A DNA stretch of 64,000 nucleotides from Heptranchias perlo (GCF_035084215.1 NC_090340.1:3162001-3226000); one strand, 5' to 3'. Numbered from the stretch's first letter, positions 4,994 to 58,370 are shown. The notes: a model not told the origin generated them from the letters alone. A program made the numbers and translations.

Positions 4994-5107
4994 ATACCGA
5001 TCGTGGCTTTCCACTCGTGATAATATGTATCTGTATAGGGGTTGGAATGTTAATTCTACTATTGGTGATCATCATAGTGAAACTACTTAAATTACATAGA
5101 TTCGAAG
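4994..5107 (+). CDS. IgSF receptor gene 1, transmembrane exon (DTDRGFPLVIICICIGVGMLILLLVIIIVKLLKLHRFE); donor mutated, read-through stop at 5128-5130
   Basis: ttttgcAG acceptor, 114 nt, phase 1-1; hydrophobic stretch followed by basic stop-transfer residues; 107/114 nt identical to 58257-58370; the homologous donor reads CTAAGC instead of GTAAGC. Confidence 0.85.
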
Positions 5108-5179
5108 CTAAGCATTCTCGTTGTATCTAGTATCCCATGATTGTTTTACGTCTAAAATATTACAGAATCGTAGTATCAT

Positions 5180-8100
5180 AGAATGATACAGCAAAGAAGG
5201 AGGTCATTTAGCGCACCGTACTTGTCCCGGCTCATTGAAAGTGCGATGCAATTAGTTCCATTCACCATAGCCCTGCAATTTTCCCTCTTTAAAGTATTCC
5301 CTTTTAAATGTTATTATTGAATCTGCTTCCACAACCCTTTCAGGCAGTGCATTACTGATCATAAAAACTCGACGCATAAAAAGAAATTCCCCCCATCTGG
5401 CCTCTGCTTATTTTGTAAATTACATAAGAACATAACAAATTGGAGCAGGAGAAGGCCACACAGCACCTCGAGACTGCTCTGCCATTCAATATGATCATGG
5501 CTGATCTTCGACCTCAACACTTGTTTCCTGCCCTATCCACATATCCTTCCATTCCCTTAATTTCCAAATATCCATCGATCTCAGTCTTAAATATACTCAA
5601 CGACTAAGCATCCATAGCCCTCTGGGGTAGAGAATTCCAAAGATTCACAACCCTCTGCTTGAAGAAATGTTTCCTCAGCTCAGTCCTAAATGGCCGACAC
5701 CTAATCTTGAAAGTATGCCCCTAGTTTTAAATTCTACAGCCAGGGGAAACAGCCTCTCAGCACCTCCCCTGTCAAGCCCTCTAAGAAATGTATACGTTTC
5801 AATGAGATCTCCTCTCATTCTTCTAAACCTCAGATAATATAGGCCCATACTACTCAATCTCTCCTCATAGGACAACCCTCCCACCCCACGAATCAATCCA
5901 GTGAAACTTCGTTGCACCCCCTCTAAGACAAGTATATCGTTCCTTAGGCAAGAAGACCAAAACTGTACATGGTACACCAGGTGTTTTCTCACCTGTGCCC
6001 TCTCCAATTGCAGCACGATTTCCTTGCTCTTATACTCCAGCCCCCTTGCAATAAAGGCTAACATATTATTTGCTTCCTAATTGCTTGCTATACTTACATT
6101 TTTTAATTTCTATAATTCATGTACAAATCACACAAATCCCCCTGATTACCAACATTTCTTACTCTATCACCTTTTAAAAAATATTCTGTTTTTCTATTCT
6201 TCTTATCGAACTGGATAATTTCACATTTCCCCACTTCAGAATACATCTGACAATCTTCTCGCCCACTCACCTAACCTGTCGATATTCATTTGCAGTCTCT
6301 GTGCATCCGCCTCACAGCTTACTTTCCCACGTAATTTTGTATCATCATCAAACCGTGGACACATTACACTAGGTCCCTTCATCTAAGACATTGGTATAGA
6401 TTGTAAGCAGCTGAGGCCCAAGCACTGATCCTTGCGGCAATCCACTGGATACAACTTGCTAACCCGAAAATACCCGTTTATTCCTTCTCTCTGTTTTCTG
6501 TCCATTAACCAATCCTCAATTCATGCTAATGTATCACCCCCAATCCCATGAGCCATAATCGTATGTAACAATCTCTTGTATGGCAACTTATCGAATGACT
6601 TTAGAAAATCCAAATATGCAATATCCACTGATTCCCCATTATCTGCCTTGCTATTTACACCTTCAACAAACTCTTAATACATGTGTCAATTGCCTTTAAT
6701 CTGTATGCCCTGGCTATCGATCTTTCTTCCACTGGAAAAGTTTCTTCTGATTTACTCGATCAAAACACTTCATGACTTCGAACGCTTCGAATCAATATCC
6801 TTAATCTTCTCTGCTCCAAAGAGAACAACCCCAGCTTATCCAGTCTCCCGTAACTGAAGTCCCACATCCCTGGTCCATTCGAGCATATCTCTGTGCATCC
6901 ACTCTGAGGCCATGACATCCTTTGTAAACTCTCGTTCCAAGAATTAGACACAATGATCCAGCTGGGGCCGAACAAGTGATTGATAAATGTATAGCATCAC
7001 TTCTTGGCTTTTGCACTGTGCGCCTCAGTTTAAATAGCCAACGATCACATATGCTTTTTTTTACAGCATTCAAAACTTGTCCTGCCACATTCAAAGATTT
7101 GTGTAACATACAAACATAGAAAATAGGAGTCGGAGTAGGTCTTTCGGCCCTTCTAGCCTCCTCCACCATTCAATATGATCATGGCTAATCCTCCATCTCA
7201 ATACCATATTCCTGCTTTCTCCCCAGACCCCTTGATGCCTGCTGATTCTAGAAATCTATTTATCTCTTTATTAAATATAATCACTTTCTACCACAGCCCT
7301 CTATGGCAGAGAATTCCACAGGTTCACCACCTTCAGAGTGAAGATATTTCTCCTCATCTCAATCCTAAATGTCCTAACCAGAATCCTGAGACTGTGACCC
7401 CTCGTTCTGGAGACCCAGTCAGGGGAAAACATCCTCCCTGTACCCAGTCTGTCTAGCCAAGTTTGAATTGTATACGTTTCAATGAGATCCCCTCTCATTC
7501 TTCTAAACTCTAGTGAATGCAGGCCTGGTCGACCCAATCTCTCCTCAAACAACAGTCCTGCCATCCCAAGAATAAGTCTGCTGAACCATTGCTGCACTCC
7601 CTCTATGGCAAGTCTATCTTTTCTTAGGTAAGGAGACCAAAACGGCACACAATACTCCAGGTGTGGTCTCACCAAGGCGCTCTATAATGCAGTACGACAC
7701 CTTTGCTCTTGTACTCAAATCCTCTTGCAATGAAGTCCAACATACCATTTGCCTTCCTAACTGCGAGCTGCACCTGCATGTTTGCTTTCAGTGACTGGTG
7801 TACAAAGACACCCAGGTCCCTTTATACATAACCATGTCCCAATCTATCACCAATTAAATAATAATCTGCCTTTCTGTTATTCCTTCCTTTATAATACACT
7901 CTAGAAATTTTCCCCAGTACTGATTTTAGGCTAACCGGTCTGTAGTTCCCTGTTTTCTCTCTCCCTCCTTCTTGAAATAGTGGGGTTACATTTGCCACCC
8001 TCCAAACTTCAGGAACTGTTCCATAATCTATAGAATTTTGGAAGATGACAACCAATGCATCCAGTATTTTCATGGCTACCTCTTTTGGTACTGTAGGATG

Positions 8101-8460
8101 CAGATCATCAGGCCCTGGAGATTTATCGGCTTTCAGTCCCGTTGATTTCTACAGCACTATTTTTTTACTAATACTAATTTCCTTTAATTCCCCTTCTGAC
8201 TAGACCCTTGGTTCCCGAGCATTTCTGGGAAATTATTTGTGTCCTTTTCCGTGAAGACAGAACCAAAGTATGTGTTTAATTGCTCTGCTATTTGTTCAAT
8301 TGCTCTGCTATTTCTTTGTTCCCCATTATAAATTCTCCCATTTCTGACTGTATGGGACCAATATTTATCGTCACTAATCATTTTGTTTTTAAACACTTGT
8401 AGAAGCTTTTTTGTTTCTTGCAAGTTTGCTCTCATATTCTATTTTTCCCCACGTCTCTCT
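5180..8460 (-). mobile_element. Cluster of nested CR1 LINE 3' fragments
   Basis: ORFs 5675-6064, 7301-7675 and 7822-8073 carry CR1 ORF2 motifs (VRPHLEYCVPFWSPYLRKD, RRMRGDLIETY, NYRPVSL); CR1 tail repeats cataagaacata and catagaaaata. Confidence 0.88.
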
Positions 8461-8479
8461 GTTCCTGCTTTAAAATTTC

Positions 8480-12275: not shown

Positions 12276-12779
12276 TATAATTTTGACTAAAAAAGCGGAT
12301 ATTATCATTGCACCAGTGGAAATCAAGATTCGATCAGACCTAAGAACAATTGCCGACTATTTTGTAAACAAAAGAATTAGTGCAACCGGACAAACAGCGA
12401 CTGGAACAAGAGATAAAAGGACCACAATGTTTGACTGAAACTTACTTCGGACAAATGGGCTATAACATTCCATGCGATGCCATCAGTCTCTCATGCCAAC
12501 GTCATAACTGGCTCAAAATGACTTTTTAAGTTAGTCCCCTCAAGGTGCAGCCGGTTCTGCAGCAAAGTTTAAAGCAGGAGACTTGGAGAACCGTGACGAT
12601 ATTACAGAGCCATGCCTGTAGAATATCTCATCTCTCTTGGTAATTTGAGCTGCAACTTACAATTGAACTAATCCGTAACAAGGGTTGCATAGCTGCTTTA
12701 ACAAAGGGATTGTGAACCATCACTCGCTGAAATCAAAGGAAATGTGACGATAATAACGAAATTAAAGATATTTTCTAGA

Positions 12780-15549: not shown

Positions 15550-15659
15550 ATTTGCAAGAAACAACAGATGAACAGCTCACTTACGCAACTTTGAATTTTA
15601 CTGACCCCAAGAGGCATTCCAACCTCAAACAGATGAAAGGGAAAGACGTGAACGCGGAG
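15550..15659 (+). CDS. IgSF receptor gene 1, cytoplasmic exon 1 (DLQETTDEQLTYATLNFTDPKRHSNLKQMKGKDVNAE) with ITIM LTYATL
   Basis: AG at 15548-15549 (weak pyrimidine tract); donor gag|GTACTG; phase 1 in matches the TM exon and phase 0 out matches the next exon; ITIM at 15576-15593. Confidence 0.75.
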
Positions 15660-16871: not shown

Positions 16872-17036
16872 GTTCCGCAAATGGTAGCTGAAGGACTGAA
16901 CTACTGTGCTGTAAATGTCGTCGGTCAGAAGGCACGACCCAAACCGAAACGGCAGGAGGAGGCCATCGTGTATGGGCAGGTGCAGCTTAACAATCCAAAG
17001 AGGGTGCTCAGGACGCACAGTCATCGAAAAAAATAA
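16872..17036 (+). CDS. IgSF receptor gene 1, terminal coding exon (VPQMVAEGLNYCAVNVVGQKARPKPKRQEEAIVYGQVQLNNPKRVLRTHSHRKK*) with ITIM-type motifs LNYCAV and IVYGQV
   Basis: ttacAG acceptor, phase 0, 54 open codons to TAA 17034-17036; too short to appear in the ORF track. Confidence 0.8.
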   Translation, partial: VPQMVAEGLNYCAVNVVGQKARPKPKRQEEAIVYGQVQLNNPKRVLRTHSHRKK

Positions 17037-17320: not shown

Positions 17321-17326
17321 AATAAA
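17321..17326 (+). terminator. Candidate polyadenylation signal of gene 1
   Basis: AATAAA about 285 nt after the stop, with GT-rich sequence downstream (ttcagtgttttc); a second AATAAA overlaps the stop codon (17032-17037). Confidence 0.4.
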
Positions 17327-18906: not shown

Positions 18907-18911
18907 TGTAT

Positions 18912-37300: not shown

Positions 37301-38391
37301 CAGCTAAACTTTATGCAAGGCTTGCCTCCGACAAATTTCAGCCAAAACACAATCCTAACATTGCAGCAGACTTTTAAACAGCCACCAGCTAAACCGCGCT
37401 ACAGACCATTCCGCTTGCGCTGACAGCTCCCTACACGGTACTTGCAGTATTCCAGCCCTTGCTGCAATTGGCCCGAAACCTGTACAATTGAAAACCTGTA
37501 CAGGATTGTTTAGGCACATATTGTTCGTTCTTAGGGCCGTTTTAGATTCAGGTATCAATCCATATTTGGGGATAAGGAAATGCAGCACCCCGTCCCTCCA
37601 GCTTCTGATTAAGTTTCAAGTCTATTTCCTTGTAGATAACGTGACATGAACTGCCGGAAAAACTCCGAGGCAACGCGGTGACCAACCAGGAATGCACGTA
37701 ATAATATAATACTGTCCTTGCCCATTGCACCTGTGGCCATTCTAGAGGCACCTTGCCATGATCATTAAATATATCAATATTCAACCAAACCTTCTTCTGA
37801 GATTCCGCAATTTCCATGCGTACATGCTTCAACTCTACCCGCAGTTTGGTTAGAATGCAACAGAGTCAAAATCTTGACCGTGTTTCTCGAAAAAAAAGAA
37901 GTAATTCAAAGCCTTGACATTATCTGAATATGTTTCGGTATTACAATCATGCGGGATAAAACCCCTCGTTTTTCTGGCAGTGGGTCATCTCTCAGAAATT
38001 AGCTGCTACAAAGATCCCCTGAATTTTTTCGCAGCAAATTGTGCTTCGCTTTATATTTTACAAGCAGCCCAGAAAAAAATGATCCGTTCTAATTAACATT
38101 TACTCGTAAATGAGGAGCCATAACAATTACGGTTCTCCATCCATCCAACGAATTGAATGCATACGCTGCAGAAGTGATCACGTGACCCGTAGGTTTAATT
38201 TGCATTGATTCAAGACATCCTCCCATTTTTGCAGCGTATTCCCGCTCATAAACAGATTGGTCCCGTCTATTTCCACCATTGTGGTGGATTAAAGCACTTT
38301 CCCTATTGTCAGCGACAGTAAGTGAGAGAACAATATTCATCCAATCCTTTTTCTGGAATGTCCAGTTTGATCCAATCATTATCAAGCTACA

Positions 38392-38707
38392 GAGTTCAGA
38401 CAAGGTACAGCGCTAATAATACGGAGTTCAGAGAACACACAGCGCCAAGTCTAGGGAGTTCAAAGAACAGACAGCACCAACAGTACTGAGTTCAGAGGAC
38501 AGGGCTGACACGATCGAGTTCATAGAACAGACAGCGCCAACACGACAGAGTTCAGAGAACAGAAAGCACCAACACGACCGAGTTCAGAGAAGAGACCGCA
38601 TCAACACTACCGAGTTCACAGAACAGACAGGGCTGACACTGCCCAGTTCAGAGAACAGACAGGGCTAACACTACTGAGTTCATCCAACAGACAGCACCAA
38701 CACAACC
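38392..38707 (+). repeat. 32-bp minisatellite, about 10 units (consensus GAGTTCAGAGAACAGACAGCGCCAACACGACC)
   Basis: Ten head-to-tail units starting gagttca or cagttca; nine are 32 bp and one is 28 bp. Confidence 0.92.
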
Positions 38708-39169: not shown

Positions 39170-39765
39170 GTTCTCCCTCTCTTTCCCTCCACACCTTTGA
39201 CCTGGATCATATTATCCCTCTCCCCTTCTGCCAAGGCTCCTCCTTCCCCCCTTTCCCCGTGATCCTGTTTTGCCGCATACCTCAGGCTATTCCTTTTATC
39301 TGGCTCCTGGTTCCCCCTGGTTCTTGCTTCCCGATTCCTTCCATGCTCCTGCTTCCCCCTTCCACCAGGAGCTCCTGCTTTAACACGGGCTTCTGCTTCC
39401 CCCCTTCCCCCAGGCTATCGCATTGCCTCATTCCCCCAGGTTACTGCATCCACCTGGCTCCAGCTTCCCCCCTTCCACCCAGGCTCCAGTTTCCATCCCC
39501 TTCCCCCAGGGCTCCTGCTTACCCCCTTCCTCCTTGCCTCTTGCTTCCACTTAGCTCCAGTTTCGCAACACCCACCGCTTCTCCCAGGCTCCTGCTTCCC
39601 TACTTCCTCCCTGGCTCCTGCTTCCCCCCACCTCTTGTCTGCATATTCCTGCTTCCCCACCTTACCCTCTGTGCTCCTGCTTCCTCCGTCCACCCGGGCC
39701 CCAGCTTACCCCCTTCCCCCGAGTTCCAGCTTCCACTTTCCCCCGTTCTTCTGCTTCCTCATTTT
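39170..39765. repeat. C/T-rich degenerate tandem repeat (about 23-nt unit ccaggctcctgcttcccccttcc)
   Basis: Repeated ctcctgcttcccc motifs; it produces the spurious Pro-rich ORF 39259-39819. Confidence 0.8.
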
Positions 39766-39784
39766 CTCAAGGGGACACAGCGAA

Positions 39785-40600
39785 GTGTACAAATACAGTC
39801 ATCACCGGGGATTCGATAGACAGGGGGATAGAGAGCTTTTCTGCAACTGTCGACATGAATCTAGGATAGTGTGTTGGCTTCTTGGTGCCAGCTTAAAGGA
39901 TATCATGGAAAGGATGTAGAACATTCTGCGTGGGGAAAGGGAACAGCCAGAAGTAATAGTCTATTTTGGAACCAATGACATAGGAAGAAAAAGGGTTGAG
40001 GTCCTACAGACAGAGATTCAGGAGCTAAAGGGGAAACTAAAGAGATGGACCTGAAAGATGTTAATGTCTGGAATTCTCCGAGTGCCACGAGCTAGTGAGT
40101 ATAGGAATAGCAACAGAAAGCCCGTTCATGTGGGCTGGATAAATGGTGCGGGAGAGAGGGCTTCGGATTCATGTGGCATTAGGAACCAGTCAGTGGCAGA
40201 AGGGACCTGCACAAGATGGACCGTTTGCACCTGAAGAGTGCTGGCATCAATGTCCTCACAGGGAGGTTAACTAGTGCAGAGGGGAAGGATTTAAATCCTA
40301 GCAGGGGGGGCGGTCACCAGCGGACACAGATTCCATAAAATTGGCAAAAAAGCCGGGGAAGATGAGGAGATTCTTTTTTACTCTATGACTTGTTATGAAC
40401 TGGAATGCAGTGCCTGAAAGGGAGGTGAAAGCAGATTCAATAGCAACTTTCAAAAGGGAAGGAGATATAAGCTTAAAACAGGAACATTTGTCGGTCTGTG
40501 CAGCAAGTGCAAGCGAGTGGGACTAATTAGTCGGACTTTCGGAGAGCCGCCACAGGCACGATGGGACGAATGGCCACATTCAAAGCTGTATGTTCTATGA
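39785..40600 (+). mobile_element. CR1 ORF1 (GDSL/SGNH esterase) remnant followed by a CR1 3' tail
   Basis: GDSIDRGIE..FCNCRHESRIVCWLLGASLKDIMER and D-x-LHL motifs; tail sequence at 40350-40600. Confidence 0.75.
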
Positions 40601-41450: not shown

Positions 41451-42451
41451 CCCACCCATTTCTTCTCCAACCTGAAAGTCCACATGGTACTCCAATCATC
41501 CTTTTCCTTGGATGTTCAATCCAACTGGAGCACTCTCGCTAATTAGCTTCACCATGAGCTGCATTTGAGAGTTAATTTAGTACATGACATGAACTTTGAG
41601 ACATGCGTCTATTTGTTTAAAAAATGAATGGCAATGCTCTAAGGAGTTTGGGAAAGGCCACATGCAAAGATCTGTATATGTTGATTGAAGCAATACTGTT
41701 TACAACAACATCAACGTTTTAACGTTTTTAGCGTCAGTTTAAATCGTGCGCAAAGTGAGAACGCGCTCCACAGTGGCAGATACATTAGCAGTTAATTGCC
41801 AGGTCATGGTCTATTATAGACGGACTTGGAGCTGTTTCCCTGCGGAATCACGCACCATATGGACTTCACGTAATGCCATGTTTCAATTCACAATATGTAG
41901 CATTATCTCACAACTGTGTGCATTAACCTCCCAGAAAAGCACCAGTAGATCTAAATTGAAATTGTTATTTATCGGTAAGCAACTAACCCAACGTTCCCTC
42001 TGGAAATCACTTCCCCCGCTCCCTCGCTCGGTCGGTCTCTCTCTCCCTTGCCCTCTACTTTCCGTATCTCCTTCCAATGCAAACTCCTTTACCTTGCGCT
42101 GGCATTTCACAGCTTCCTATTCTAAATCGCTTTTCGACCTTTCTTTCGGGGATGTCCTTTTACAATGGTACGTCCTGAACCGCAATGTCGTAAAGAGACT
42201 TCAGTTCTTGATTCCAGATTATTGAAATTTCGACATTGTTTTTTGTCTGTTCGTTCAACAAATCCGTGGTTTGTAAATTTCTTTAGTGAGAGTTGCAGGA
42301 GTGGAACGGAAACCCTGCACGTTGTAGGCGGAACGCACATCCTGCGCAACCACGTTCCTCAGCCGGATGGCATTCAGCATAGATATGTTACAACCTTACA
42401 AGTCAATGTAACAGTTGTCTGATCGGAGTATCTGCAGCGCTCAAGTCAGTT

Positions 42452-42518
42452 ATGGGTTTAGTTCTGGCTCGGAATGCCATGTTTCAGTATTGTGCCACGC
42501 TGGGGATTTTCTGCACAG
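42452..42518 (+). CDS. IgSF receptor gene 2, leader exon (MGLVLARNAMFQYCATLGIFCT; alternative ATG at 42479)
   Basis: Hydrophobic signal-like peptide ending in a phase-1 donor cag|GTATTC, 207 nt before the V exon. Confidence 0.7.
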
Positions 42519-42725: not shown

Positions 42726-43037
42726 TTGCCCTGGATGTTTCACGGAAAGTCCCTGAATCTGTGAAGGCGAACACAGGTGAGAATGTAACATTACAGGGCA
42801 ACGTATCTGGATTCCAGAAGATTGAGGATATGAATGTTTACTGGAGTAAGAACGATTCCCAGCAAAACGTAATAATTACGCCTGACAACCGCGTAATATC
42901 TCGTGTTCTACCGAATGGAACATTTTTTCTTCATCTACAGAATGTGAGTTTCCACGACTCTGGAGCCTATCGTTGTAGAGTGAGAGTTGGGAACTCCAAT
43001 TATGTTGATGGATGCGGCACAGAACTAATCGTATGTG
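42726..43037 (+). CDS. IgSF receptor gene 2, germline-joined VJ-type V-set domain exon
   Basis: tttccgacAG acceptor and g|GTAAGC donor, 312 nt, phase 1-1; motifs GENVTL, VYW, FFLHLQNVSFHDSGAYRC and the J-like G-strand GCGTELIV; the canonical first Cys is Gly (GGC 42797-42799). Confidence 0.92.
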
Positions 43038-45067: not shown

Positions 45068-45098
<31 letters not shown>

Positions 45099-48276: not shown

Positions 48277-48570
48277 TTCCTCCGACGCCTTTGCAGATTT
48301 CCCCCACTGTGTCATCGACTGCTTTGACTCTTGTGTGTAAAACAGCTGCGTTTTTCCCGGAAAAGCTGAACATTAGTTGGTATAAAAATGGATCCGAAAT
48401 TCTGAGCGGTATGGAACCAATCAAAGACCAGAACCTAGCGGGACTGTATGAAGTTTCCAGTTATCTCACTGAAACAGGTCCGTTGCAGAGTGGAACTAAT
48501 TACACCTGTCAGGTATCACACGTCTCTCTCCAGACTGGAGCCAGTGTTCATTACATTTCTCAAATTTCAG
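48277..48570 (+). CDS. IgSF receptor gene 2, C1-set domain exon
   Basis: tttatcaacAG acceptor and cag|GTAAAT donor, 294 nt, phase 1-1; C1 hallmarks LVCKTAAFFPEKLNISWYKNG, GLYEVSSYL and YTCQVSHVSL. Confidence 0.93.
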
Positions 48571-50726
48571 GTAAATTTTCAAGTTTAAAAACAGCTATGT
48601 ATAATTCCAATATGCAGAAAAAAATGTTTCAGAAGAGTTTGCCGATTTTCTCCGCCTTTCATGAAATTGATGATTTTGCTGTGATCCGTCTCCACAGACT
48701 GTTGGACCCATTTTTTGCTTCGTGAGTTGCTACTCTTAATGTGAGATCCGAAAGAGTTTCGGGAGAACTTTATACCAATAGCCAAATCTATCTCCACCCT
48801 TCAGTTTTCAGCAAGGACATTTGTACATGATCTGAAGAAAGGCACGTGTTTTATTGTCCTTTTCCCCAGTCCAGGTGGAGGTCGGTTTTCCCGCCCCAAT
48901 AAATTGATGAGCACTTACCGGAAATGCACCAACCTGAGAATTTCTGACCTATTTGGCCCTTAAATCAAGCGGAAATTCTACACTTTTTTGCACGAAATCA
49001 TTTTCCCCATCCTCCGGGAATTCCAGACATTACCGTCTGGAATTTCGGGGTCGAATTTGGCCTTTTGTCCGAGGTTTGCGGGACTTTCCTACGAGGTTAA
49101 ATGGGGGAGAACACGACAACAATGAGCGAAAATTCTGCCCTTATGTATTCAGACCTTTGCCGGATGCTGTCTTCACCGACCAGGCCTTGCATGAATCTAC
49201 GTTTATCAGTTAAATCCATCGGTATAACGGCAGCATTCTATAAGGCTGGTAACAGATTTATTTCTTTATATAAATTTCATTATTGTGCGAAATGAGGTAG
49301 AAGTTTTGGTTGCATCGAAACATTTCCTTAAATGTCAGTCAATCATATCTCAGAATTACAGCATTTCAATCAAATTCTTTTGTAAAGAAAATGTATTAGC
49401 CGCACTCATATTTTGGGAGATATCTTGATTCTCCCCGCTTCAAGTTTATTGGAGTACGCAATTCCAAATATGCCCGTTAATGGACACTTCCGTTATCAAT
49501 ACATTTACTTAAGCTCGCGGGAATATACCGTCAGAAGCCTGAAATCTTTCACCGTCACTGATACAAGTCGAAACGATATAAATTAAGCAGATAGGATAAA
49601 GAAAAGTTATGACTAACAGTGATTGGGAACATAGAAACAATGGAAGTCGCCCATTCAGCCCCTCGAGCCTGTTTCGCCATTAATTGTTTTCATGGTTGAT
49701 CTGTATCCGAACTCCAACCACCCGCCTTGGCTCTATATCCCTTAATACCCTTGGCTAACACTAATCTATCGCTGTCAGATTTAAAGTTATTAATTGAGCT
49801 CGCATCTACCGCTTTTTGTGGGAGTTCCACACTTCCACCACCCTTTTCGTGAAGAAGTGTTCCCTAACTTCTATCCCGAATGAAGTGGCTCTGATTTTAA
49901 GGCTATGTTCCCTTTTCTAGACTCCACCATCAGCGGAAATGTTTATTTCTATCTATCCTATCAATTCCTTTCAAAATCATAAAAACCTTAATGAAACAAT
50001 TACTTAACCTTCCATATTCCAGGAAATACAAGGCTAGTTTATGCAATCTCTGCTCATAATAATATAACTTAAAGCTCTGGTAACATTCTTGTGAGTTTGC
50101 TCTGCACTCCTTCCAAGACCAATGTATCCTATTCAATGTGCAGTGCCCAGAAGTGAACACAGTCGTCCAGATGCGGTTTAACCAGGCTTTCTATAGCTGT
50201 AGCAAAACTTCCTCCGCTCCACATTCTCGCTCTCTCGTAATAAAGGCTAACGTTGCATTAGCCCTTTTGATTATTTTTTGACCTGTCTAAAACTTTACAA
50301 TTATCACTTTTTAAGGACTCTTAAATCTCCTTAGACCTCCATTGTTCGTAGATTGTCACCGTTTAAAAAATATTCGTATCTATCTTTGTCGGTCCAAAGT
50401 GGTTGATCTCAACCTTGATTGCATTGAAATCGATTTGCCAAAGTTATCTAAGTCATTAATCAATATAATAATTAGTTGAGGCCCCAGCACAGATCCTTTT
50501 GAGACAACACCAGTGACTTCCTCCAAATTGGAGTGCATAGCCATTATCCTTACTTTCTGTCTTCTACCACCTAACCAATCTCCAAAACAGGTTAATAATG
50601 TGCCTTCAATTCCTTGAGCTTTCATTTCAGCTCGCATTCCCTGAAATGCAACCTTATCAAATGCTTTATGGACGTCCATATAAACTTCATCCGTGGACAT
50701 ACTTTAGTTCATTGCTCACAAAATTA

Positions 50727-53700
50727 GGGTACGGTAGCATAGTGGTTATGTTACTGTACGAGTAGTAGTCCAAAGGCCTGGGCGAAAATCTGGAGTCATG
50801 AGTTCAAATCCCGCCACGGCAGCTGGCGAATTTAAATTCAATTAATTAATTTAATTAAATGATTTAAATACAAATCTGGAATTAAAATACTAGTATCAGT
50901 AATGGTGGCCATGAAACGACCGGATTGTCATAAAAACCCATCTGGTTCACTAATGTCCTTGATGGAAGGAAACCTGCCGTCCGAACCCGATTTGGCCGAA
51001 ATGTGACTCCAGACCCACATCAATGTGGTTGATTCTTAATTGCCCTCTGAAATGGCCTAGCAAGCCACTCTAGTTGCAAAATCTCGCTCCAAAAAGTCAG
51101 AATAAGAATAAAACCCGACGAACCACAATGCACCAGACACGACAACAGCAAACCAATCCCAGTCGACCCTGCAAGGTCCTCCTTACCAACATCTGGGGAC
51201 TTGTGCCAAAATTGGGAGAGCTGTCCCACAGACGAGTCAAGCAACAGCCTGACATAGCCATACTCACAGAATCATACCTTTCAGCCAACGTCCCAGACTC
51301 TTCCATCACCATCCCTGGGTATGTCCTGTCCCACCGGCAGGACAGACCCACCCCAGGTGGCGGTACAGTGATTTTCAGTCAGGAGGGAGTGGCCCTGGGA
51401 GTCCTCAACATTGACTGGACCCCATAAAATCTCATGGCATCAGGTCAAACATGGGCAAGGAAACCACCTGCTGATTACCACCTACCGTCCTCCCTCAGCT
51501 GATGAATCAGTCCTCCTCCATGTTGAGCATCACTTGGAGGGTAGCAAGGGCACAAAACGTACTCTGGGTGGGGGACGTCAACGTCCATCACCAAAAGTGG
51601 CTAGGTAGCACCACCACTGACCGAGCTGGCCGAGTCCTGAAGGACATAGCTGCCAGACTGGGCGTGCGGCAGGTGGTGAGCGAACCAACACGAGGGCCAA
51701 AACTTACTTGACCTCGTCCTCACCAAGCAACTTGTCGCAAATGCATCTGTCAATGACAGTATTGGTAGGAGTGACCACCGTACAGTCCTCGTGGAGATGA
51801 AGTCCCGTCTTCGCACTGAGGACACCATCCAACGTGTTGTGTGGCACTACCACCGTGCTAAATGGGATAGATTCAGAACAGATCTAGCAACTCAAAACTG
51901 GGCATCCATGAGGCGCAGTGGGCCATCAGCAGCAGCAGAATTGTGTTCCAGCACAATCTGTAACCTCATGGCCCGGCATATTCCTCACTCTACCATTACC
52001 AACACGCCAGGAGATCAAACCTGGTTCAATGAGGAATGTAGAAGAGCATGCCAGGAGCAGCACCAGGCGTAACTAAAAATGAGGTGCGAACCTGTGAAGC
52101 TACAACTCAGGACTACATGCGTGCTAAACAGCAGAAGCAACATGCTATAGACAGAGCTAAACGATTCCACAACCAAAGGATCAGATCAAAGCTCTGCAGT
52201 CCTGCCACATCCAGTCGTGAATGGTGGTGGACAATTAAACAACTAACGGGAGGAGGAGGCTCTGCAAACATCCCCATCCTCAATGATGGCGGAGTACAGC
52301 ACGTGAGTGCAAAAGACAAGGCTGAAGCGTTTGCAACCATCTTCAGCCATAAGTGCCGAGTGGATGATCCATCTCGGCCTCCTCCCGATATCCCCACCAT
52401 CACAAAAGCAAGTCTTCGGCCAATTCGATTCACTCCACGTGACATCAGGAAACGGCTGTGCGCACTGGATACAGCAAAGGCTATGGGCCCCGACAACATC
52501 CCAGTTGTAGTGCTGAAGACTTGTGCTCCAGAACTAGCTGCGCCTCTAGCCAAGCTGTTCCAGTACAGCAGCAACACTGGCATCTACCCGACAATGTGGA
52601 AAATTGCCCAGGTATGTCCTGTTCACAAAAAGCAGGACAAATCAAATCCAGCCAATTACCATACCATCAATCCACTCTCAATCATCAGCAAATTGTCAAC
52701 AATTTTACAACACCAAGTTATAGTCCGACAATTTTCTTTTAAAATCACAAGCTTTCGGAGGCTTCCTCCTTCCTCAGCTGAATGTTCCTCAGGAAGGAGG
52801 AAGCCTCCGAAAGCTTGTGAATTTCAAACAAAATTGTTGGACTATAACTTGGTGTTGTAAAATTGTTTACAATTGTCAACCCCAGTCCATCACCGGCATC
52901 TCCACATTATGGCAATCATCAGCAAAGTGATGGAAGGTGTCGTCGACAGTGCTATGAAGCGGCACATACTCACCAATAACCTGCTCACCGATTCTCAGTT
53001 TAGGTTGCGCCAGGACCACTCGGCTCCAGGCCTCATTACAGCCTTGGTGCAAACATGGACAAAAGTGCTGAATTCCAGAGGTGAAGTGAGAGTGACTGCC
53101 CTTGACATCAAGGCAGCATTTGACCGAGTGTGGCACCAAGGAGCCCTCGTAAAATTGAAGTCAATGCGAATCAGGGGGAAAACTCTCCAGTGGCTGGAGG
53201 CATACCAAGCACAAAGGAAGATGGTACTGGTTGTTGGAGGCCAATCATCTCAGCCTCAGGACATTGGTGCAGGAGTTCGTCAAGGCAGTGTCCTAGGCCC
53301 AACCATCTTCAGCTGCTTCATCAATGAACTTCCCTCCATCATAAGGTCAGAAATGGGGATGTTCGCTGATGATTGCACATTGTTCAGTTCCATTCGCAAC
53401 CCCTGAAATAATGAAGGACTCCGAGCCCGAATGAAGCAAGACCTGGACAACATCCAGGCTTGGGCTCATAAGTGGCAAGTAACATTCGCGCCAGACAAGC
53501 GCCAGGCAATGACCATCTCCAAAAAGAGAGAGTCTAACCAGCTCCCCTTGAAATTCAACGGCATTACCATCGCCGAATCCCCCAGGTTGGGGTTCACCAT
53601 TGACTAGAAACTTAAGTAGACCAGCCATATAAATAATGTGGCTACGAGAGCAGGTCAGAGGCTGGGTTTTCTGCGGCGAGTGACTCACCTCCTGACTCCC

Positions 53701-54257
53701 CAAAGCCTTTCCACCATCTACAAGGCACAATTCAGGAGTGTGATGGAATACTCTCCACTTGCTTGGATGAGTGCAGCTCCAACAACACTCAAGAAGCTCG
53801 ACACCATCCAAGATAAAGAGTCCCGCTTCATTGGCACCCCATCCACTAATCTAACCGTTGAATTCCTTCACCACCGGCGCACTGTGGCTGCAGTGTGTAC
53901 CATCCACAGGATGCACTGCAGCAACTCGCCAAGGCTTGTTCGACAGCACCTCCCAAACCCGCGACCTCTACCACCTAGAAGGACAAGAGCAGCAGGCACA
54001 TGGGAACAACACCACCTGCACGTTCTCCTCCAAGTCACACACTATCCCGACTTGGAAATATATCGCCGTTCCTTCATCGTCGCTGGGTCAAAATCCTGGA
54101 ACTCCCTTCCCAACAGCACTGTGGGAGAACCGTCACCACACGGACTGCAGCGGTTCAAGAAGGCGGCTCACCACCACGTTCCAAAGGGCAATTAAGAATG
54201 GGCAATAAATGCCGGCATCGCCAGCGACGCCCACATCCCATGAACCATTTAAAAAAA
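50727..54257 (+). mobile_element. Near full-length single-ORF CR1-clade LINE (APE + RT) with tRNA-like 5' head; frameshifted
   Basis: A box tagcatagtgg 50735-50745 and B box gttcaaatcc 50802-50811; APE motifs TNIWGL, ILTES, GDVN and SDH; RT motifs DIKAAFDRVWH, QGSVLGP and FADD; A-rich tail; absent from copy A. Confidence 0.9.
52693..52912. mobile_element. Penelope-like mini-element forming an inverted repeat with minimal hammerhead-ribozyme cores; 14-bp TSD
   Basis: Arms 52691-52777 and 52788-52874 are near-perfect reverse complements; TSD caatcatcagcaaa at 52679-52692 and 52913-52926; CTGAGGA-stem-GAAA core on the minus strand. Confidence 0.78.
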
Positions 54258-57200
54258 CAATTTCATTAGGTTCCTTGGACATGACCTCAGTTTTACAAAT
54301 CCACGTTGGCTCGCTCTAATGAGCTCAAATTTCTCTATGTGCTAATACACTCTATCGTTAATTATCTATTCCAATACTTTCCCCACAACAGATGTTGGAC
54401 CAATCGGTCTATACATTCCTGTTTTTTCTCTCTCTCACCTTTCTTAAATAACGGAGTTACATTTGCAATTCTCCAATTTAAAGGGAGAATTCCTGAATGG
54501 ACAGAGCTTTGGAAGATTATGGCTAAGCATTTGTAATTTCCGCAAGTGCTTCCTTTAAACCCAGGCGTGGAAACGATCAAGTGCCATAGATTCGTCAGTC
54601 TTTGGTGGCATTACTTCTTCTAATTCTGTTTTCTTGTTCACGGTAATTTTAGTGAGTTCTGGTCCTTAATTCGTTATTAGATTGCCTGGAATATCAAGTA
54701 TATTTTTCTCTTTCTCTATTGTGAAGGCTGATGCAAAGTAATTGTTCAACAAGCCAGCCATTTCCTTATTTTCATTTTCAATATTACACGCATCTGTTTT
54801 TAAAATACCCACAGCATCCTTGACTGCTCGTTTTCTTCTAAAATAATTGGAAAATCGTTTTGTATTAATCTTGCCATCCTTCACAACTTCCTTTTTCTAT
54901 TCCCTTTTACAAATATTTCTATCTTTTTTGTCTTACTTTGCTGTTCTTTATATATCTCACAGTCCCTTGGATCTACACTATTATTTTCACTTTTGTATGC
55001 ACTTTCCTTTAGCTTTATGTTATCTCTCATTTCTTTTATCGACAATAGCTGTTTTATGTGTTCATTAGTGCCCTTGCCCCTTCGGGATATACGTTAGGCC
55101 TGTGTTAAGCTTTTTTTTTTTTTGAACACCTCCCACTGTTCATCTGTAGGTTCACCCGATAACAGCTTTGGACAGTTTGCTGTCGAAGTCTCTAATTCAT
55201 CCCGTTAACGTTGACCTTACCAATATCTAGAGCCTTAGTAACTTTGTTAATGTTCTCCGTTTCAAACCTAATATTGAATTCGATCATAATAGATCACTGT
55301 TAGATAATTAACGATGTCTGGCTCAATACTCATTATTAAATCTAGTACGACCTGCCCTTTTGTTGGTCGTAGAATATATTGCTCCAGAAAACAATATTGA
55401 ATGCACTCAAGAAATGTATTACCTTTCTGACTCCGCTCTTCCCAATTTAATTGAAAATTCAAGCCTCTGTAGTCTTTGAATTCATACATTCTGACACTCC
55501 ATTGCTGCTATCAGGAGGGCTGTAGATTACGCCCATTACAATTTAAAGTCCTCTCTTATTTCTCGAATCAACCCATGGAATCTCTGCTGATCACTTTACG
55601 TGACCTATATCCTCTCTTACTAATGTTGTAATGCTATATATAATCCTAATTATGATAACTTACAGCTATGTCTCAGTAATGGACACCATGACAAGCCCTT
55701 AAAGCTGCATTTCAGCCTCTAATTCACCCAATTTATTCATCATGCTCTGTGCACTAGTATATAAAACTCTTATTTGGCAGGAGATCCTAACCGGTCCTTC
55801 TGCCCTGATGCTGTCTTTCTCACGCTGCTTAACTTAACACGTTTCTTATTTGTCAATCCTGCTGGGGTTACTTTAGTTATTTTTGAATTCCCTTCAACGG
55901 GAGTGTCACTGTTTGTGACCTGAACTCTGCTCTCATCCCATTCTTTAATGTTTAAACTATATCTTTTACGATTGTTTTGCCACCACCACCCGCCATACAC
56001 AAAATTTACCATCCTATTTATCCTTTCCGCGAGCATTGTTAGTCAACTGTTAATCGTTTATCTGTTCAATGACTTCAGCGATTCATATCTGGATCTTGAT
56101 TTAAAAATTTGACCATGATTTTCTGAAGAGTTGCCCCGGTCTGCTGCCCGAACTTTAGTGGGACATCGGCGGAACCATTTGAGCAAAGCGGACGAAAAGG
56201 TTTGATATGGGCTGTCCATGAGCTTGTCTCCGGATTCCGCGGATTTCCCACCAAATTTACAGGGATAGCTAGGCACAAAGGCAGATATTATTCATGGCTT
56301 TTAATTTTTTCAGCTGCAATTCTTTTTGTGCAGCAACTGAAATAGCTAACCTGCAAAATAAGCGATTACACAAAATTGAAAAGACAATATATAATATATT
56401 TATCAGTAGCATGTATCCATTTAATTGTCGTCTCCATCTTAGATTTCCTTTCATAAGATATTTCTTGAATGCCTCAGTCGCTCCCAGAAGTCTCGATTTG
56501 GCCATGATATTTTGCCCAGCGCTGTCGCAATATGAGCTGAAATTAGGATATGTAGCGTGTGCCGTGTATCAGTGGCTTTTAGTCAGCTGTTGATTTATCC
56601 ACGAAAAAGCGAAATGTGAGAATATTTATTCAAAAAAAGTTTATATTCAGTGTTTCAGAAAATGCAGGCCTGTTTTGTGCGTGTGTTAGTGAGAGCAAGA
56701 GAGAGACAGCTGAGTTTACAAAAAATAGCATTATGTGTCATACCACTATTATTTTTTGTACTGTGTTCTATAAATTACAGAAAGTTTATTAAGCTGAGGA
56801 ACAGAGGGCGAGAGAAACTTCTGTCTTAAATTGCGTAAGGAAAGGCACAACAGGCAGCGATTGAGAGAGGGGAGGGACAGAAGAGAGAGTTAAAGCCTTT
56901 GTTCAGGTTAATATTTTCACACAAAAAATGCATTTTGTGGCATATAATGGCTTTATCTGTATCTTACTTTTTCTTGACAGTTACTACGGTTACATTGTAA
57001 TTTGTTACAGCTGTGAGACAGACATTCTAATTATTAACACAAAAGAATTTGCGTCAGGGGAACACTTTTCATTTTTATCGCGAGGCGACAAATGGATCAT
57101 AGCAAATGGGCAGAAAATCGGGCTTGGTGCAAGACGGGTTGCCAATTCCCTTTTACCCATTTTTCGTCAAGAAATAAAAGTTAAAATTACCCCCAGTGAG

Positions 57201-58161
57201 TGGGAGAGATAGAAGAGATGTAGACAACCAGTGGCTTTACCTCTTTCGAAATTAATTGCATTCAAAATGTAAGCGATATTTTCAAATCAAGCACCGTCTG
57301 TAATATGAAGATTGGGCAATATTCCATAGAATTACATAACATTTACAGCACAGAAACAGGCCATTCGGTCCAACTGGCCTATGCCGTTTTTAATGCTCCA
57401 GACAAGCCTCTTCCCACGTTAATTCATCGAACCCTATCTGCATATCTTTCGATTCATACCTCCCCTATGTGCGTATCTTGCTTCACCTTCGAGGCATCTA
57501 TGCTGTTTGCCTCAGGAACTCCATATGGTAGCAAGTTCCACATTGTAAAAACTCTCTGGGTAAAGAAGTTTCTACTAAGTAGTAGGAGGGAGTAACCGGC
57601 AAAGGGTAAGGTTGCCTTAGACCTGTCAGCATGGGAGTGGGACGAATTGGATAAGTCTTTTAAATTGGCTTCCACTGTTAGAGCATGAATGCAGACAAGG
57701 AAGCAGAGGCAGATTGAGGAGGGAAGCAACACGAACTTAGGGACAGAGAGCATCAGGGGCAAAAGAATAAGGCAGAAGTAGAAGAGGGGAGACGGCGGCA
57801 GAAACATTATTACCAAGACAACTGAGATAGTTAAGGTAGAGACCATGGATTTGAAATTTTATGGGGTATCACTGATCTGGCGTCATAATTTGTATGCGAG
57901 ACAAGCGAAACCTCAAAGGAACCATGTAGACAGCTAAAAATCGCCGTTTAAACTACTTATATGGTGTTGCTGCCAATTTCCCACCGAAACTATAAGGGGA
58001 GACCAACGACAGCCGCACAGTTTTCGGGCCTCCGCTATTTACCTGGGTGATCCACTGTTGCTTTGGTAACGTTATGGCAAGACCCTGGGGCAAACCTGCA
58101 GAAAATATCAGAACTTATATCTTAAGCCTATATTCGATAAATTCAGTTTCTCTCATTTCAG

Positions 58162-58232
58162 AATGTGATGATTCACAGTCCCAGACTTGGCACGATAATG
58201 CAACCCTTGTTCATGATCAGTTAGAATTTTAA
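58162..58232 (+). other. Candidate alternative 3' exon (secretory-type tail) of gene 2: ECDDSQSQTWHDNATLVHDQLEF*
   Basis: tttctctcatttcAG acceptor, phase 1, conserved with 4899-4969. Confidence 0.3.
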
Positions 58233-58256
58233 GTGGGATTTCTGTTTATTTTGCAG

Positions 58257-58370
58257 ATACCGATCGTGGCGTTCCACTCGTGATAATATGTATCTGTATC
58301 GGGGTTGGACCATTAATTCTACTATTGGTGATCATCATAGTGAAACTACTTAAATTACATAGAATCAAAG
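58257..58370 (+). CDS. IgSF receptor gene 2, transmembrane exon (DTDRGVPLVIICICIGVGPLILLLVIIIVKLLKLHRIK)
   Basis: ttttgcAG acceptor, aag|GTAAGC donor, 114 nt, phase 1-1, in frame with the C1 exon; uncharged hydrophobic helix. Confidence 0.88.

What the first reader, a model, noticed from the sequence alone, without database searches (positions are those of the whole stretch)
4994..58370. Tandem family of non-rearranging VJ-C1 receptors with a triple-ITIM tail
Seen: exons of two paralogues fit by splice phase into one architecture of leader (67 nt), V (312), C1 (294), TM (114), cyt1 (110) and cyt2 (165), which is 1062 nt or about 353 aa. The V exon already contains the J-like G-x-G-T strand (YRC-10aa-GCGTELIV) and has no RSS. 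It is followed by one C1-set domain, an uncharged TM and three ITIM-type motifs (LTYATL, LNYCAV, IVYGQV). Known: C1-set domains are largely confined to Ig, TCR, MHC/b2m, tapasin, SIRP and B7-like proteins; SIRPs have a VJ-like domain, two C1 domains and ITIMs, and germline VJ-C1 genes have been proposed as relatives of the pre-RAG antigen receptor. Inference: this is an expanded shark cluster of inhibitory receptors shaped like an IgL/TCR chain, and may be an uncharacterised family. The full model is a composite of two copies, because gene 1's ectodomain and gene 2's tail lie outside the window.
Basis: partly seen in the sequence, partly recalled or inferred. Interest (0 to 1): 0.85.

Follow-up and report, generated by a model that had tools for sequence, protein, structure and literature searches.

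The report
Two flawed shark VJ-C1 receptor genes
The window holds the back half of one gene and the front half of its tandem copy, both from a large family of fixed (non-rearranging) antibody-like receptors with inhibitory-type tails that is found only in cartilaginous fish; the family is real but carries only inconsistent automatic names, and each copy here has a possibly disabling defect.

Summary
All seven exons exist at the stated sizes and phases, with AG/GT borders except one. Pfam calls the V exon V-set and the next exon C1-set. The V exon carries a germline G-x-G-T-E-L-I-V strand and has no RSS. The tail has three ITIM-type motifs.

The two genes are a tandem duplicate about 53 kb apart, roughly 86% identical.

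The composite model matches full-length predicted proteins from sharks, rays and chimaera. About 50 protein clusters share leader-VJ-C1-TM-tyrosine tail. They carry inconsistent automatic names (tapasin-related-like, SIRP-alpha-like, B7-H6-like, lambda-like). I found no paper describing them. The nearest named relatives are SIRP-alpha, Ig light chains/TCR chains and UrIg2.

Two caveats apply:
- Gene 1's TM donor is CT, not GT.
- Gene 2's V domain has Gly where all 24 aligned relatives have the canonical cysteine.

No protein in the searched collections exceeds 39% (V) or 54% (C1) identity, so these look like divergent, probably unannotated and possibly decaying members. One run covers the V and C1 exons but not the unique intron. 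No splice junction was seen.

Earlier notes of this scan report the same family at many other places on this chromosome.

The parts
4994..5107 (+). Gene 1 TM exon (114 nt, phase 1/1). Peptide TDRGFPLVIICICIGVGMLILLLVIIIVKLLKLHRFE, uncharged core.
   Evidence: It is 89% aa identical to the gene 2 TM exon. It aligns to the TM of family proteins at their residues about 226-262.
5108..5121 (+). Gene 1 TM donor region. CT stands where gene 2 has GT (5108-5109). Read-through ends after AKHSRCI at a TAG. A weak in-frame GT (CTC|GTTGTA) lies at 5120-5121.
   Evidence: The read-through and the cryptic site were read directly from the sequence.
15550..15659 (+). Gene 1 cytoplasmic exon 1 (110 nt, phase 1 in, phase 0 out). 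Contains LTYATL (15576-15593).
   Evidence: AG/GT borders. Weak alignment to the family tail unit (E 0.003-0.02 in a small database).
16872..17036 (+). Gene 1 cytoplasmic exon 2 (165 nt with stop). Contains LNYCAV (16896-16913) and IVYGQV (16965-16982). The two tyrosines are 23 residues apart.
   Evidence: It aligns to residues 285-321 of Callorhinchus family proteins (E about 1e-4).
42452..42518 (+). Gene 2 leader exon (67 nt), MGLVLARNAMFQYCATLGIFCT. It forms a split leader with a 207-nt intron.
   Evidence: The donor is G|GTATTC. The ...Y-x-x-x-L-G-I-x-x-T pattern matches family leaders by eye. No significant BLAST hit, because the peptide is too short.
42726..43037 (+). Gene 2 VJ exon (312 nt). 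V-set domain with the J-like strand GCGTELIV (43010-43033). The canonical B-strand Cys is replaced by Gly (GGC, 42797-42799). Extra Cys sit in G-C-G and in the final IVC.
   Evidence: Pfam V-set E = 2e-11. 35-39% identity to family V domains. The alignment shows Cys>Gly. AF2 gives an Ig sandwich, pLDDT 79. A contig of run X1 covers 42752-42973.
48277..48570 (+). Gene 2 C1-set exon (294 nt). Starts (V)PPTPLQI. Has LVCKT...WYKNG...YTCQVSH. All family-invariant residues are kept.
   Evidence: Pfam C1-set E = 6e-13. 49-54% identity to family C1 domains. PDB best single domain is the Ig lambda constant domain at 31.7 bits; UrIg2 domains give 24-25 bits. A contig of run X1 covers 48309-48552.
58257..58370 (+). 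Gene 2 TM exon (114 nt), TDRGVPLVIICICIGVGPLILLLVIIIVKLLKLHRIK. The donor G|GTAAGC is intact. Its cytoplasmic exons are expected beyond the window's end.
1..6918 (+). Duplicated segment, copy 1 (gene 1's C1-TM intron, TM exon and the start of the next intron).
   Evidence: Self-BLAST: 1-6918 matches 50202-60185 at 82-89% identity, offset 53.3-53.6 kb.
50202..60185 (+). Duplicated segment, copy 2. It is interrupted by a repeat insertion at about 50727-54257 that copy 1 lacks.

Best explanation
The window holds two tandem paralogues, about 53 kb apart and on the same strand. They belong to a multigene family of non-rearranging type I membrane receptors found only in cartilaginous fish.

The family layout is split leader, one exon for a germline-joined VJ-type V domain, one C1-set domain, an uncharged TM, and a tail of repeated tyrosine motifs.

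Inferred mechanism, step by step:
1. The V domain binds an unknown ligand.
2. Src-family kinases phosphorylate the tail tyrosines.
3. The phospho-ITIMs recruit SHP-1/SHP-2 and dampen cell activation.
This is how SIRP-alpha works. Tail-less or short-tailed relatives in the family would act as non-inhibitory partners.

Shown: the exons, the domain types, the duplication, family membership, and the family's taxonomic range.
Inferred: the TM-to-tail splice, any phosphorylation or phosphatase binding, and the ligand.

The two copies here are a divergent lineage of the family, and each carries a lesion. Gene 1 has lost its TM splice donor, so it would make a tail-less product or none. Gene 2 has lost the canonical V-domain cysteine. 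One or both may therefore be decaying.
For: Exons and splice phases.

Domain calls: V-set and C1-set.

No RSS.

Tandem duplication.

No further Ig exon in the window when searched with 24 family proteins.

Family membership:
- An HMMER scan of 1.84 billion representatives with the V exon gave, as the only hits covering the whole V including the J strand, cartilaginous-fish proteins of 264-423 aa.
- Those proteins read leader-VJ(GxGT/SxLxV)-VPPTP...YTCQVSH-TM-tyrosine tail.
- Their source names come from Heterodontus, Callorhinchus, Mobula, Scyliorhinus and Chiloscyllium.
- Wider searches add Heptranchias, Hemiscyllium, Carcharodon, Cetorhinus, Stegostoma, Pristiophorus, Narcine and Hemitrygon. 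After E = 1e-50 the scores fall sharply to 84 bits or less for non-chondrichthyans.

The window's exons align to these proteins in the right order.

ITIM excess over chance: P about 7e-4.

SIRP-like or AgR-like affinity:
- A family profile against the PDB puts an Ig lambda-containing chain first, UrIg2 (9dmx) second and SIRP-alpha (2wng) fourth of 11,753 matches.
- The ESM Atlas's nearest named clusters are SIRP-alpha, at 0.96 with 203-205 of 256 features shared.
- Foldseek on an AF2 model of a family member gives light chains and TCR beta at E about 1e-15.

SIRP-alpha signalling is taken from PMC12975943.

Transcription: run X1 has contigs inside the V and C1 exons at depth 3.8 and 7.1. Unique intron bins have depth 0-1.
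Against: - No read or contig crosses any splice junction, and the run's RNA status is itself a guess.
- The ITIM exons come from gene 1, whose TM donor is CT. So no single gene in the window is shown to make the full protein.
- Gene 2's V domain lacks the cysteine that is invariant in all 24 aligned relatives.
- The TM exons differ at 7 of 114 nt. Six of those seven changed bases lie in four amino-acid-changing codons, which shows little purifying selection.
- No protein in the 15-billion-sequence collection is closer than 39% (V) or 54% (C1), although other members of the family from many sharks are there. That fits unannotated or pseudogene status.
- Nothing has been tested for phosphatase binding or ligand.
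- Structural search does not separate SIRP, IgL, B7 or nectin-type two-domain proteins; Z is 14-16 for all.
Confidence: 0.8

Rival explanations
1. Both copies are pseudogenes. This would be a decaying edge of a large receptor cluster, with open exons left over by chance and residual transcription.
For: - Gene 1's TM donor is GT>CT.
- Gene 2's canonical Cys is replaced by Gly, against 24 of 24 relatives.
- Changes in the TM exon are mostly non-synonymous.
- No annotated protein is closer than 39% or 54% identity in collections that hold many other family members.
- The C1 end branch is 0.56 against a median of 0.26.
Against: - All seven exons are open, and 11 of 12 splice signals are intact.
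- The C1 exon keeps every family-invariant residue, and the V exon keeps 17 of 19.
- TM exon divergence is 6%, lower than the flanking introns at 11-15%.
- The V and C1 exons appear in contigs of a probable RNA run.
- A weak in-frame GT lies 12 nt after the lost donor.
- Some working Ig domains lack the disulfide (general knowledge).
Confidence: 0.4
2. These are the cartilaginous-fish orthologues of SIRP (SIRP-alpha, -beta and -gamma) that have, or retain, only one C1 domain. On this view they are plain SIRPs, not a separate family.
For: - NCBI automatic names such as 'tyrosine-protein phosphatase non-receptor type substrate 1-like'.
- The ESM Atlas's nearest named clusters are SIRP-alpha.
- SIRP-alpha (2wng) ranks fourth of 11,753 for the family profile, aligned over V plus C1.
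- The family tail has four spaced tyrosines (YAxLNx, VYAQT, TYAxLD, EYAxI). From memory, this resembles the SIRP-alpha tail.
- The family also has short-tailed members, as SIRP does.
Against: - SIRPs are defined by one V and two C1 domains (PMC12975943). Here, and in all relatives seen, there is one C1.
- A natural V-only isoform of the family hits lambda V, CD79b, TCR alpha, VNAR and NKp30 in the PDB, with no SIRP among the best 60.
- No bony-vertebrate SIRP appeared in either family search, though those searches are word-limited.
Confidence: 0.25
3. The family is a B7/B7-H6/butyrophilin-type ligand family (V-C ectodomain), not a receptor family.
For: - Automatic names 'NCR3 ligand 1-like', 'CD276 antigen homolog' and 'butyrophilin-like' for some members.
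- VIA-align puts B7-H6 (4zso) at rank 2 with Z 16.2, and PD-L2, BTN2A1 and B7-H3 at Z about 15.
- The window's V exon hits CD276 and BTN2A1 at E about 2e-4.
Against: - Those structural scores tie with nectins, Neph1 and light chains.
- By sequence profile, B7 proteins are not among the best 60, whereas lambda, UrIg2 and SIRP-alpha are.
- The V domain has a canonical J-like G-x-G-T-x-L-x-V strand.
- The tail carries repeated ITIM-type motifs typical of inhibitory receptors.
Confidence: 0.08
4. The composite is wrong: the ITIM exons at 15.5-17 kb belong to another gene, and the VJ-C1-TM genes have short tails.
For: - No junction was seen.
- Gene 1's TM donor is destroyed.
- The family has natural short-tailed members.
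Against: - cyt1 and cyt2 have the phases needed to follow the TM exon.
- They lie on the same strand, between gene 1's TM and gene 2's leader.
- cyt2 aligns to the tail of full-length family proteins at the expected position.
- No other protein-coding exon set was found between them. The rest is retroelement ORFs.
Confidence: 0.05

Closest known systems
SIRP family (SIRP-alpha/PTPNS1, SIRP-beta, SIRP-gamma)
   Same: - Non-rearranging V domain with a J-like strand.
- C1-set domain(s).
- Single TM.
- Inhibitory members with several spaced tyrosine motifs that recruit SHP-1/SHP-2.
- Paired short-tailed members.
- Nearest named clusters in the ESM Atlas, and rank 4 in the PDB profile search.
   Different: - SIRPs have two C1 domains; this family has one.
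- The V domain by sequence is nearer to lambda, TCR, CD79b and NKp30 than to SIRP D1.
- No CD47 link is known.
- Orthology and synteny are untested.
UrIg and UrIg2 (non-rearranging elasmobranch antigen-receptor-like genes; PMC12227049)
   Same: - Split leader.
- VJ encoded in one exon without an RSS.
- True C1-set domains.
- Found in cartilaginous fish.
- UrIg2 (9dmx) is the second-best PDB match of both the family profile and the window's C1 exon.
   Different: - UrIg and UrIg2 have several to eleven C domains, form disulfide-linked homodimers, and are reported without ITIM signalling.
- This family has a single C1 and an ITIM-type tail.
- It is a large multigene cluster, not one or two genes.
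Ig light chains and TCR chains
   Same: - The two-domain VJ-C1 ectodomain.
- Best sequence and Foldseek matches: lambda constant domain 31.7 bits; light chains and TCR beta at E about 1e-15.
- The G-x-G-T-x-L-x-V strand.
   Different: No RSS and no separate J or C cluster. It has its own TM and a signalling tail.
B7-H6 / B7 / butyrophilin V-C proteins
   Same: - V plus C ectodomain with phase-1 exons.
- High structural Z scores.
- Some family members are auto-named after them.
   Different: - Not among the best sequence-profile matches.
- No B30.2 domain.
- The J-like strand and the ITIM repeats point to a receptor.
NKp30 (NCR3) and PRARP: single-V, non-rearranging VJ receptors
   Same: - Germline VJ domain.
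- NKp30 appears among the PDB hits of the family V domain.
- PRARP is cited as a VJ gene near the MHC (PMC10751288).
   Different: From general knowledge, these have no C1 domain. NKp30 signals through a charged TM, not through ITIMs.
Tapasin / TAPBPR
   Same: C1-set domain next to a V-like domain. The commonest automatic name for family members is 'tapasin-related protein-like'.
   Different: The family has no N-terminal tapasin domain and no ER-chaperone features. The name reflects only the shared Ig domains.

Membership tests
Cartilaginous-fish VJ-C1-TM tyrosine-tail family (unnamed; e.g. XP_067905922, XP_042196405) | Split leader followed by a single exon that encodes V plus the J-like G-x-G-T/S-x-L-x-V strand | tested here: met
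   Leader 42452-42518, 207-nt intron, VJ exon with GCGTELIV.
Cartilaginous-fish VJ-C1-TM tyrosine-tail family (unnamed; e.g. XP_067905922, XP_042196405) | One C1-set domain that starts VPPTP and carries C-x-T...W-Y-K...Y-x-C-x-V-S-H | tested here: met
   The window's C1 exon keeps all invariant columns and is 49-54% identical. No second Ig exon is present.
Cartilaginous-fish VJ-C1-TM tyrosine-tail family (unnamed; e.g. XP_067905922, XP_042196405) | Canonical V-domain cysteine pair (invariant C46 and C105 of alignment A1) | tested here: not met
   The F-strand Cys (YRC) is present. The B-strand Cys is Gly, GGC at 42797-42799. This departure is specific to this copy, not to the family.
Cartilaginous-fish VJ-C1-TM tyrosine-tail family (unnamed; e.g. 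XP_067905922, XP_042196405) | Tail built of units Y-x-x-L-N/D ... basic/Pro spacer ... V/E-Y-A-x-x | tested here: met
   cyt2 (LNYCAVNV...RPKPKRQEEAIVYGQV) aligns to VAYVALNL...RPKKQEERTVYAQT of Callorhinchus proteins, E about 1e-4. The match for cyt1 is weaker.
Cartilaginous-fish VJ-C1-TM tyrosine-tail family (unnamed; e.g. XP_067905922, XP_042196405) | All parts joined in one transcript | tested here: inconclusive
   Contigs lie inside the V and C1 exons only and cross no junction. Gene 1's TM donor is CT.
SIRP family | Ectodomain of one V-set and two C1-set domains (PMC12975943) | tested here: not met
   One C1 exon lies between V and TM, and no other Ig exon is found in the window. All relatives also have one.
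SIRP family | Inhibitory member with cytoplasmic ITIMs that recruit SHP-1/SHP-2 | tested here: inconclusive
   Three ITIM-type motifs are present. Phosphatase binding cannot be tested with these tools.
SIRP family | D1 binds CD47 | not testable with these tools
   No binding data. The V domain is only 35-39% identical even to its own family.
SIRP family | Orthology by phylogeny and conserved synteny | not tested
Only indirect signs are available.
UrIg / UrIg2 | VJ followed by several C1-type domains; homodimeric; no ITIM tail (PMC12227049) | tested here: not met
   Single C1 and an ITIM-type tail. The sequence similarity is at the level of generic C1 domains, 24-25 bits per domain.
Rearranging antigen receptors (Ig/TCR) | RSS-flanked V, (D) and J segments | tested here: not met
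   V and J are contiguous in one exon. There is no heptamer, and the best RSS-like site has 6 of 16 mismatches.
B7 / butyrophilin | V-C ectodomain that groups with B7/BTN by sequence | tested here: inconclusive
   Structural Z of 15-16 ties with many two-Ig proteins. No B7/BTN is in the best 60 profile hits.

The most novel reading that the evidence does not exclude
The family could be a surviving membrane-bound descendant of the two-domain VJ-C1 gene that Flajnik et al. (PMC12227049, Fig. 2 legend) predict as the first form of the UrIg/antigen-receptor precursor. On that reading it would be a one-chain, germline-fixed 'proto-TCR/IgL' coupled to inhibitory signalling. It would have been kept and expanded in all cartilaginous fish, and SIRPs would be its bony-vertebrate offshoot.
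Probability: 0.1. Interest if true: 0.85.

Novelty: new variant of a known kind. Interest (0 to 1): 0.42.

Why it matters
Germline-joined VJ-C1 genes are rare, and they are used to reason about what the RAG transposon invaded.

A family of VJ-C1 membrane receptors with inhibitory tails that is large and spans all cartilaginous fish, yet is neither UrIg nor a textbook SIRP, would add a third reference point for that debate.

It would also show that paired-receptor clusters on an antigen-receptor-like scaffold existed before sharks and chimaeras split.

This window itself adds little beyond a divergent, probably decaying pair. Its practical value is to show that the cluster holds unannotated and damaged members, and that database names for the family are unreliable.

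Tried and rejected
**Searches that gave nothing or could not decide**
- A word-index search with the V part of the unspliced ORF found nothing.
- The Rfam scan of the window found nothing.
- A look-up of the scan's own notes by sequence found nothing, which means nothing.
- The structural searches could not discriminate between families.
Only a within-family C1 tree was made. It used 34 family rows plus the window; partial or near-duplicate models were left out.

Every search used single exons, an unspliced genomic ORF, or natural database proteins.

**Readings considered and rejected**
- CD28-family membership: single V, no C1 (PMC11599192).
- UrIg membership: multiple C domains.
- A GC donor one base before the lost GT in gene 1: it shifts the frame into a stop in cyt1.

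**Literature**
- Six literature searches found no description of this family. The library holds open-access papers only.

Full report

Yes. The window has no N. Reading the sequence at the stated places and checking borders by script gives these exons.

Gene 2:
- leader 42452-42518 (67 nt)
- VJ exon 42726-43037 (312 nt)
- C1 exon 48277-48570 (294 nt)
- TM exon 58257-58370 (114 nt)

Gene 1:
- TM exon 4994-5107 (114 nt)
- cyt1 15550-15659 (110 nt)
- cyt2 16872-17036 (165 nt, with stop)

All acceptors are AG. All donors are GT except gene 1's TM donor, which reads CT where gene 2 has GT. The sizes sum to 1062 nt and the phases fit.

Pfam calls the V exon V-set (E = 2e-11) and the next exon C1-set (E = 6e-13). 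Three such motifs in 90 residues compare with 0.17 expected from the window's own six-frame translation (P about 7e-4).

There is no RSS. No heptamer lies within 600 nt of the V exon, and the best heptamer-spacer-nonamer has 6 of 16 mismatches.

Self-comparison shows a tandem duplication. Positions 1-6918 match 50202-60185 at 82-89% identity with an offset of 53.3-53.6 kb. Copy 2 is interrupted by a repeat insertion at about 50727-54257.

Searching the window with the exon peptides and with 24 family proteins finds no further V, C1 or tail exon.

**2. What is it?**

All searches used single exons, an unspliced ORF, or natural database proteins.

A word-index search with the V part found nothing. 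A full HMMER scan of 1.84 billion representative proteins with the V exon gave many multi-Ig proteins through summed scores. The only hits covering the whole V domain including the J strand were proteins of 264-423 aa at up to 39% identity.

Their sequences read leader, VJ (NGTGTELIVH), VPPTPLK...YTCQVSH, TM, and a tail with LSYAAL, TVYAQT, LTYASL and VEYSEI.

Their sources are horn shark, elephant shark, devil rays, catshark and bamboo sharks. Their names include 'tapasin-related protein-like', 'signal-regulatory protein beta-1 isoform 3-like', 'tyrosine-protein phosphatase non-receptor type substrate 1-like' and 'uncharacterized'.

Searches with one member and then with a 16-sequence profile raise the count to about 52 clusters. 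They add sevengill shark, epaulette, white, basking and zebra sharks, sawshark, electric ray and stingray. Scores run from E = 1e-158 to 1e-50 and then drop sharply to 84 bits or less for a few bony-fish and turtle proteins. [quoted passage not shown] This spread shows that no pipeline recognises the family.

At least three sub-types are visible:
- the tyrosine-tail type;
- a well-conserved type with a cysteine-rich juxtamembrane stretch and a basic tail;
- short-tailed forms.

**3. Does the composite hold?**

Exon by exon, the window aligns to these proteins in the right order.

| Exon | Identity / support | Position in family proteins |
|---|---|---|
| V | 35-39% | residues about 22-124 |
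| C1 | 49-54% | 122-217 |
| TM | weak | 226-262 |
| cyt2 | E about 1e-4 | 285-321 |
| cyt1 | weaker | same repeated tail unit as cyt2 |

For example, the window's LNYCAVNV...RPKPKRQEEAIVYGQV lines up with Callorhinchus VAYVALNL...RPKKQEERTVYAQT. So homology supports the ITIM exons belonging to this kind of gene.

Direct proof is lacking. The one sample with runs (three runs, RNA status only guessed) gave contigs in run X1 only. They lie inside the V exon (42752-42973, depth 3.8) and inside the C1 exon (48309-48552, depth 7.1), with one mismatch each. Unique intron bins have depth 0-1 and repeats have depth in the thousands. This pattern suggests transcription of gene 2, but no contig reaches a junction.

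**4. Two lesions**

*Gene 1.* The TM donor is CT.
- Read-through adds AKHSRCI and stops.
- A GC donor one base earlier shifts the frame into a stop in cyt1.
- A weak GT 12 nt downstream (CTC|GTTGTA) would keep the frame (read).

*Gene 2.* The V exon has Gly (GGC, 42797-42799) at the B-strand position where all 24 aligned relatives have the canonical Cys. It has extra Cys in G-C-G and at the last V residue. The same Gly codon is present in the X1 contig, but that run may come from the individual that was assembled.

Otherwise gene 2 looks sound.
- The V exon keeps 17 of 19 family-invariant residues, and the C1 exon keeps all of them.
- AlphaFold folds the V exon as an Ig sandwich (pLDDT 79). 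It resembles lambda V, CD79b, TCR V and I-set domains.

The two TM exons differ at 7 of 114 nt, with four amino-acid changes and one silent change. The flanking introns differ by 11-15%. Constraint is therefore weak at best.

In a C1 tree the window's exon sits in the unresolved base of the family. It falls outside the well-supported elasmobranch tyrosine-tail clade and outside the basic-tail clade. Its end branch is 0.56 against a median of 0.26.

No protein in the collections is closer than 39% (V) or 54% (C1), although many family members from annotated sharks are present. So these two genes are a divergent lineage that is probably unannotated. I put the chance that both are dead at about 0.4.

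**5. How it most likely works**

Shown: a type I membrane protein plan with a VJ-type V domain, a C1 stalk, an uncharged TM and ITIM-type motifs.

Inferred, from how SIRP-alpha and other ITIM receptors work (PMC12975943):
1. The V domain binds a ligand.
2. Src-family kinases phosphorylate the tail.
3. SHP-1/SHP-2 are recruited.
4. Activation is dampened.

The 23-residue spacing of the two cyt2 tyrosines would suit a tandem-SH2 phosphatase (inference). Short-tailed relatives, and perhaps gene 1 if it reads through, would be non-inhibitory partners. The V domain is much more divergent than the C1 domain. That fits either ligand-driven diversification or relaxed constraint.

**6. Comparison with known families**

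By sequence profile, the family's best solved relatives are:
- a lambda-light-chain-containing chain (first);
- UrIg2 (9dmx, second);
- SIRP-alpha (2wng, fourth of 11,753), aligned over V plus C1.

Other comparisons:
- The window's C1 alone scores 31.7 bits to a lambda constant domain and 24-25 bits to UrIg2 domains.
- A natural V-only isoform hits lambda V, CD79b, TCR alpha, VNAR and NKp30, with no SIRP in the best 60.
- The ESM Atlas puts two SIRP-alpha clusters first (0.96; 203-205 of 256 features).
- An AlphaFold model of a horn-shark member (ectodomain pLDDT mostly 72-96) matches light chains and TCR beta in Foldseek.
- In a non-redundant VIA search, B7-H6, Rst/Neph1, PD-L2, butyrophilins and nectins tie at Z 14-16. 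Structure therefore does not decide.

Membership conclusions:
- It is a member of the unnamed cartilaginous-fish family, apart from the copy-specific loss of the cysteine.
- It is not a SIRP by the two-C1 definition.
- It is not UrIg or UrIg2, which have many C domains and no ITIM tail (PMC12227049).
- It is not a rearranging receptor.
- It works most like SIRP-alpha.

**7. Novelty and context**

Six literature searches found UrIg, UrIg2, NKp30, PRARP and the CD28 family in cartilaginous fish, but no description of this family. The library is open-access only.

Earlier notes of this scan report the same family at many places on this chromosome, from 0.43 Mb before to 2.7 Mb after this window and again 11.8-12.4 Mb away. 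Those notes are unchecked AI notes and I use them as leads only. Several follow-ups reached the same reading: SIRP-like, auto-named, no paper. One names the genome as sevengill shark, which I did not verify.

So the family is a new variant of a known kind: a SIRP-like inhibitory or paired receptor on a single VJ-C1 scaffold. This window adds only a divergent, damaged pair.

**8. Limits**

- The Atlas could not read the window's own exon.
- No reference SIRP, IgL, TCR or UrIg sequences could be fetched for a cross-family tree.

Noticed in passing
window 41878-41974 (+): A second leader-like open exon lies about 480 nt upstream of the leader. It runs from an ATG to a strong G|GTAAGC donor, is 97 nt long, and is in phase 1 like the real leader. 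It shares a 17-nt stretch (AATGCCATGTTTCA...) with the real leader. It could be an alternative first exon or a local partial duplication.
   Followed up: partly
window 42939 and 48342: The only two differences between the X1 contigs and the window in the V and C1 exons are both A>G on the sense strand, and both change the protein (Gln>Arg; Thr>Ala at a family-invariant Thr). They could be alleles, errors or A-to-I editing. Two sites cannot tell.
   Followed up: no
window 50727-54257 and 60185-62541: Retroelement insertions (reverse-transcriptase ORFs) are present in copy 2 of the duplicated segment and absent from copy 1. They therefore date to after the duplication. Most long ORFs in the window are LINE-type RT fragments.
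   Followed up: partly
proteins P0199-P0203, P0195, P0197, P0208, P0211 (alignment A2): This is a conserved sub-type of the same family across sharks, rays and chimaera. It has V(J)-C1, WWIYLCG in the TM, a CCKFCKCK cysteine cluster, VRCSEP, and a basic KKHRKRDRD end. It has no ITIM. It looks like a single orthologous gene, and it is auto-named NCR3LG1-like, lambda light chain-like, CD276 or butyrophilin-like.
   Followed up: partly
protein P0140 (Heterodontus XP_067905015): This public gene model is a chimaera. Its first 130 or so residues are LINE reverse transcriptase, and they match several repeats in this window. They are fused to a family VJ-C1 short-tail receptor.
   Followed up: partly
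proteins P0218-P0220 (Pelodiscus sinensis): These are turtle proteins with a germline VJ domain (FGSGTRLIV), a C-like domain, a TM and a short tail ending TEYAAVRY. They are auto-named as Ig light or heavy chain-like. They are the best non-chondrichthyan V-C matches to the family profile (49-56 bits).
   Followed up: no
window 38387-38707: A tandem array of a 32-nt unit (about 10 copies, 74% matches) lies in the GC-richer intergenic stretch. A proline-rich open frame follows it (39259-39819). It is probably repeat-derived.
   Followed up: no
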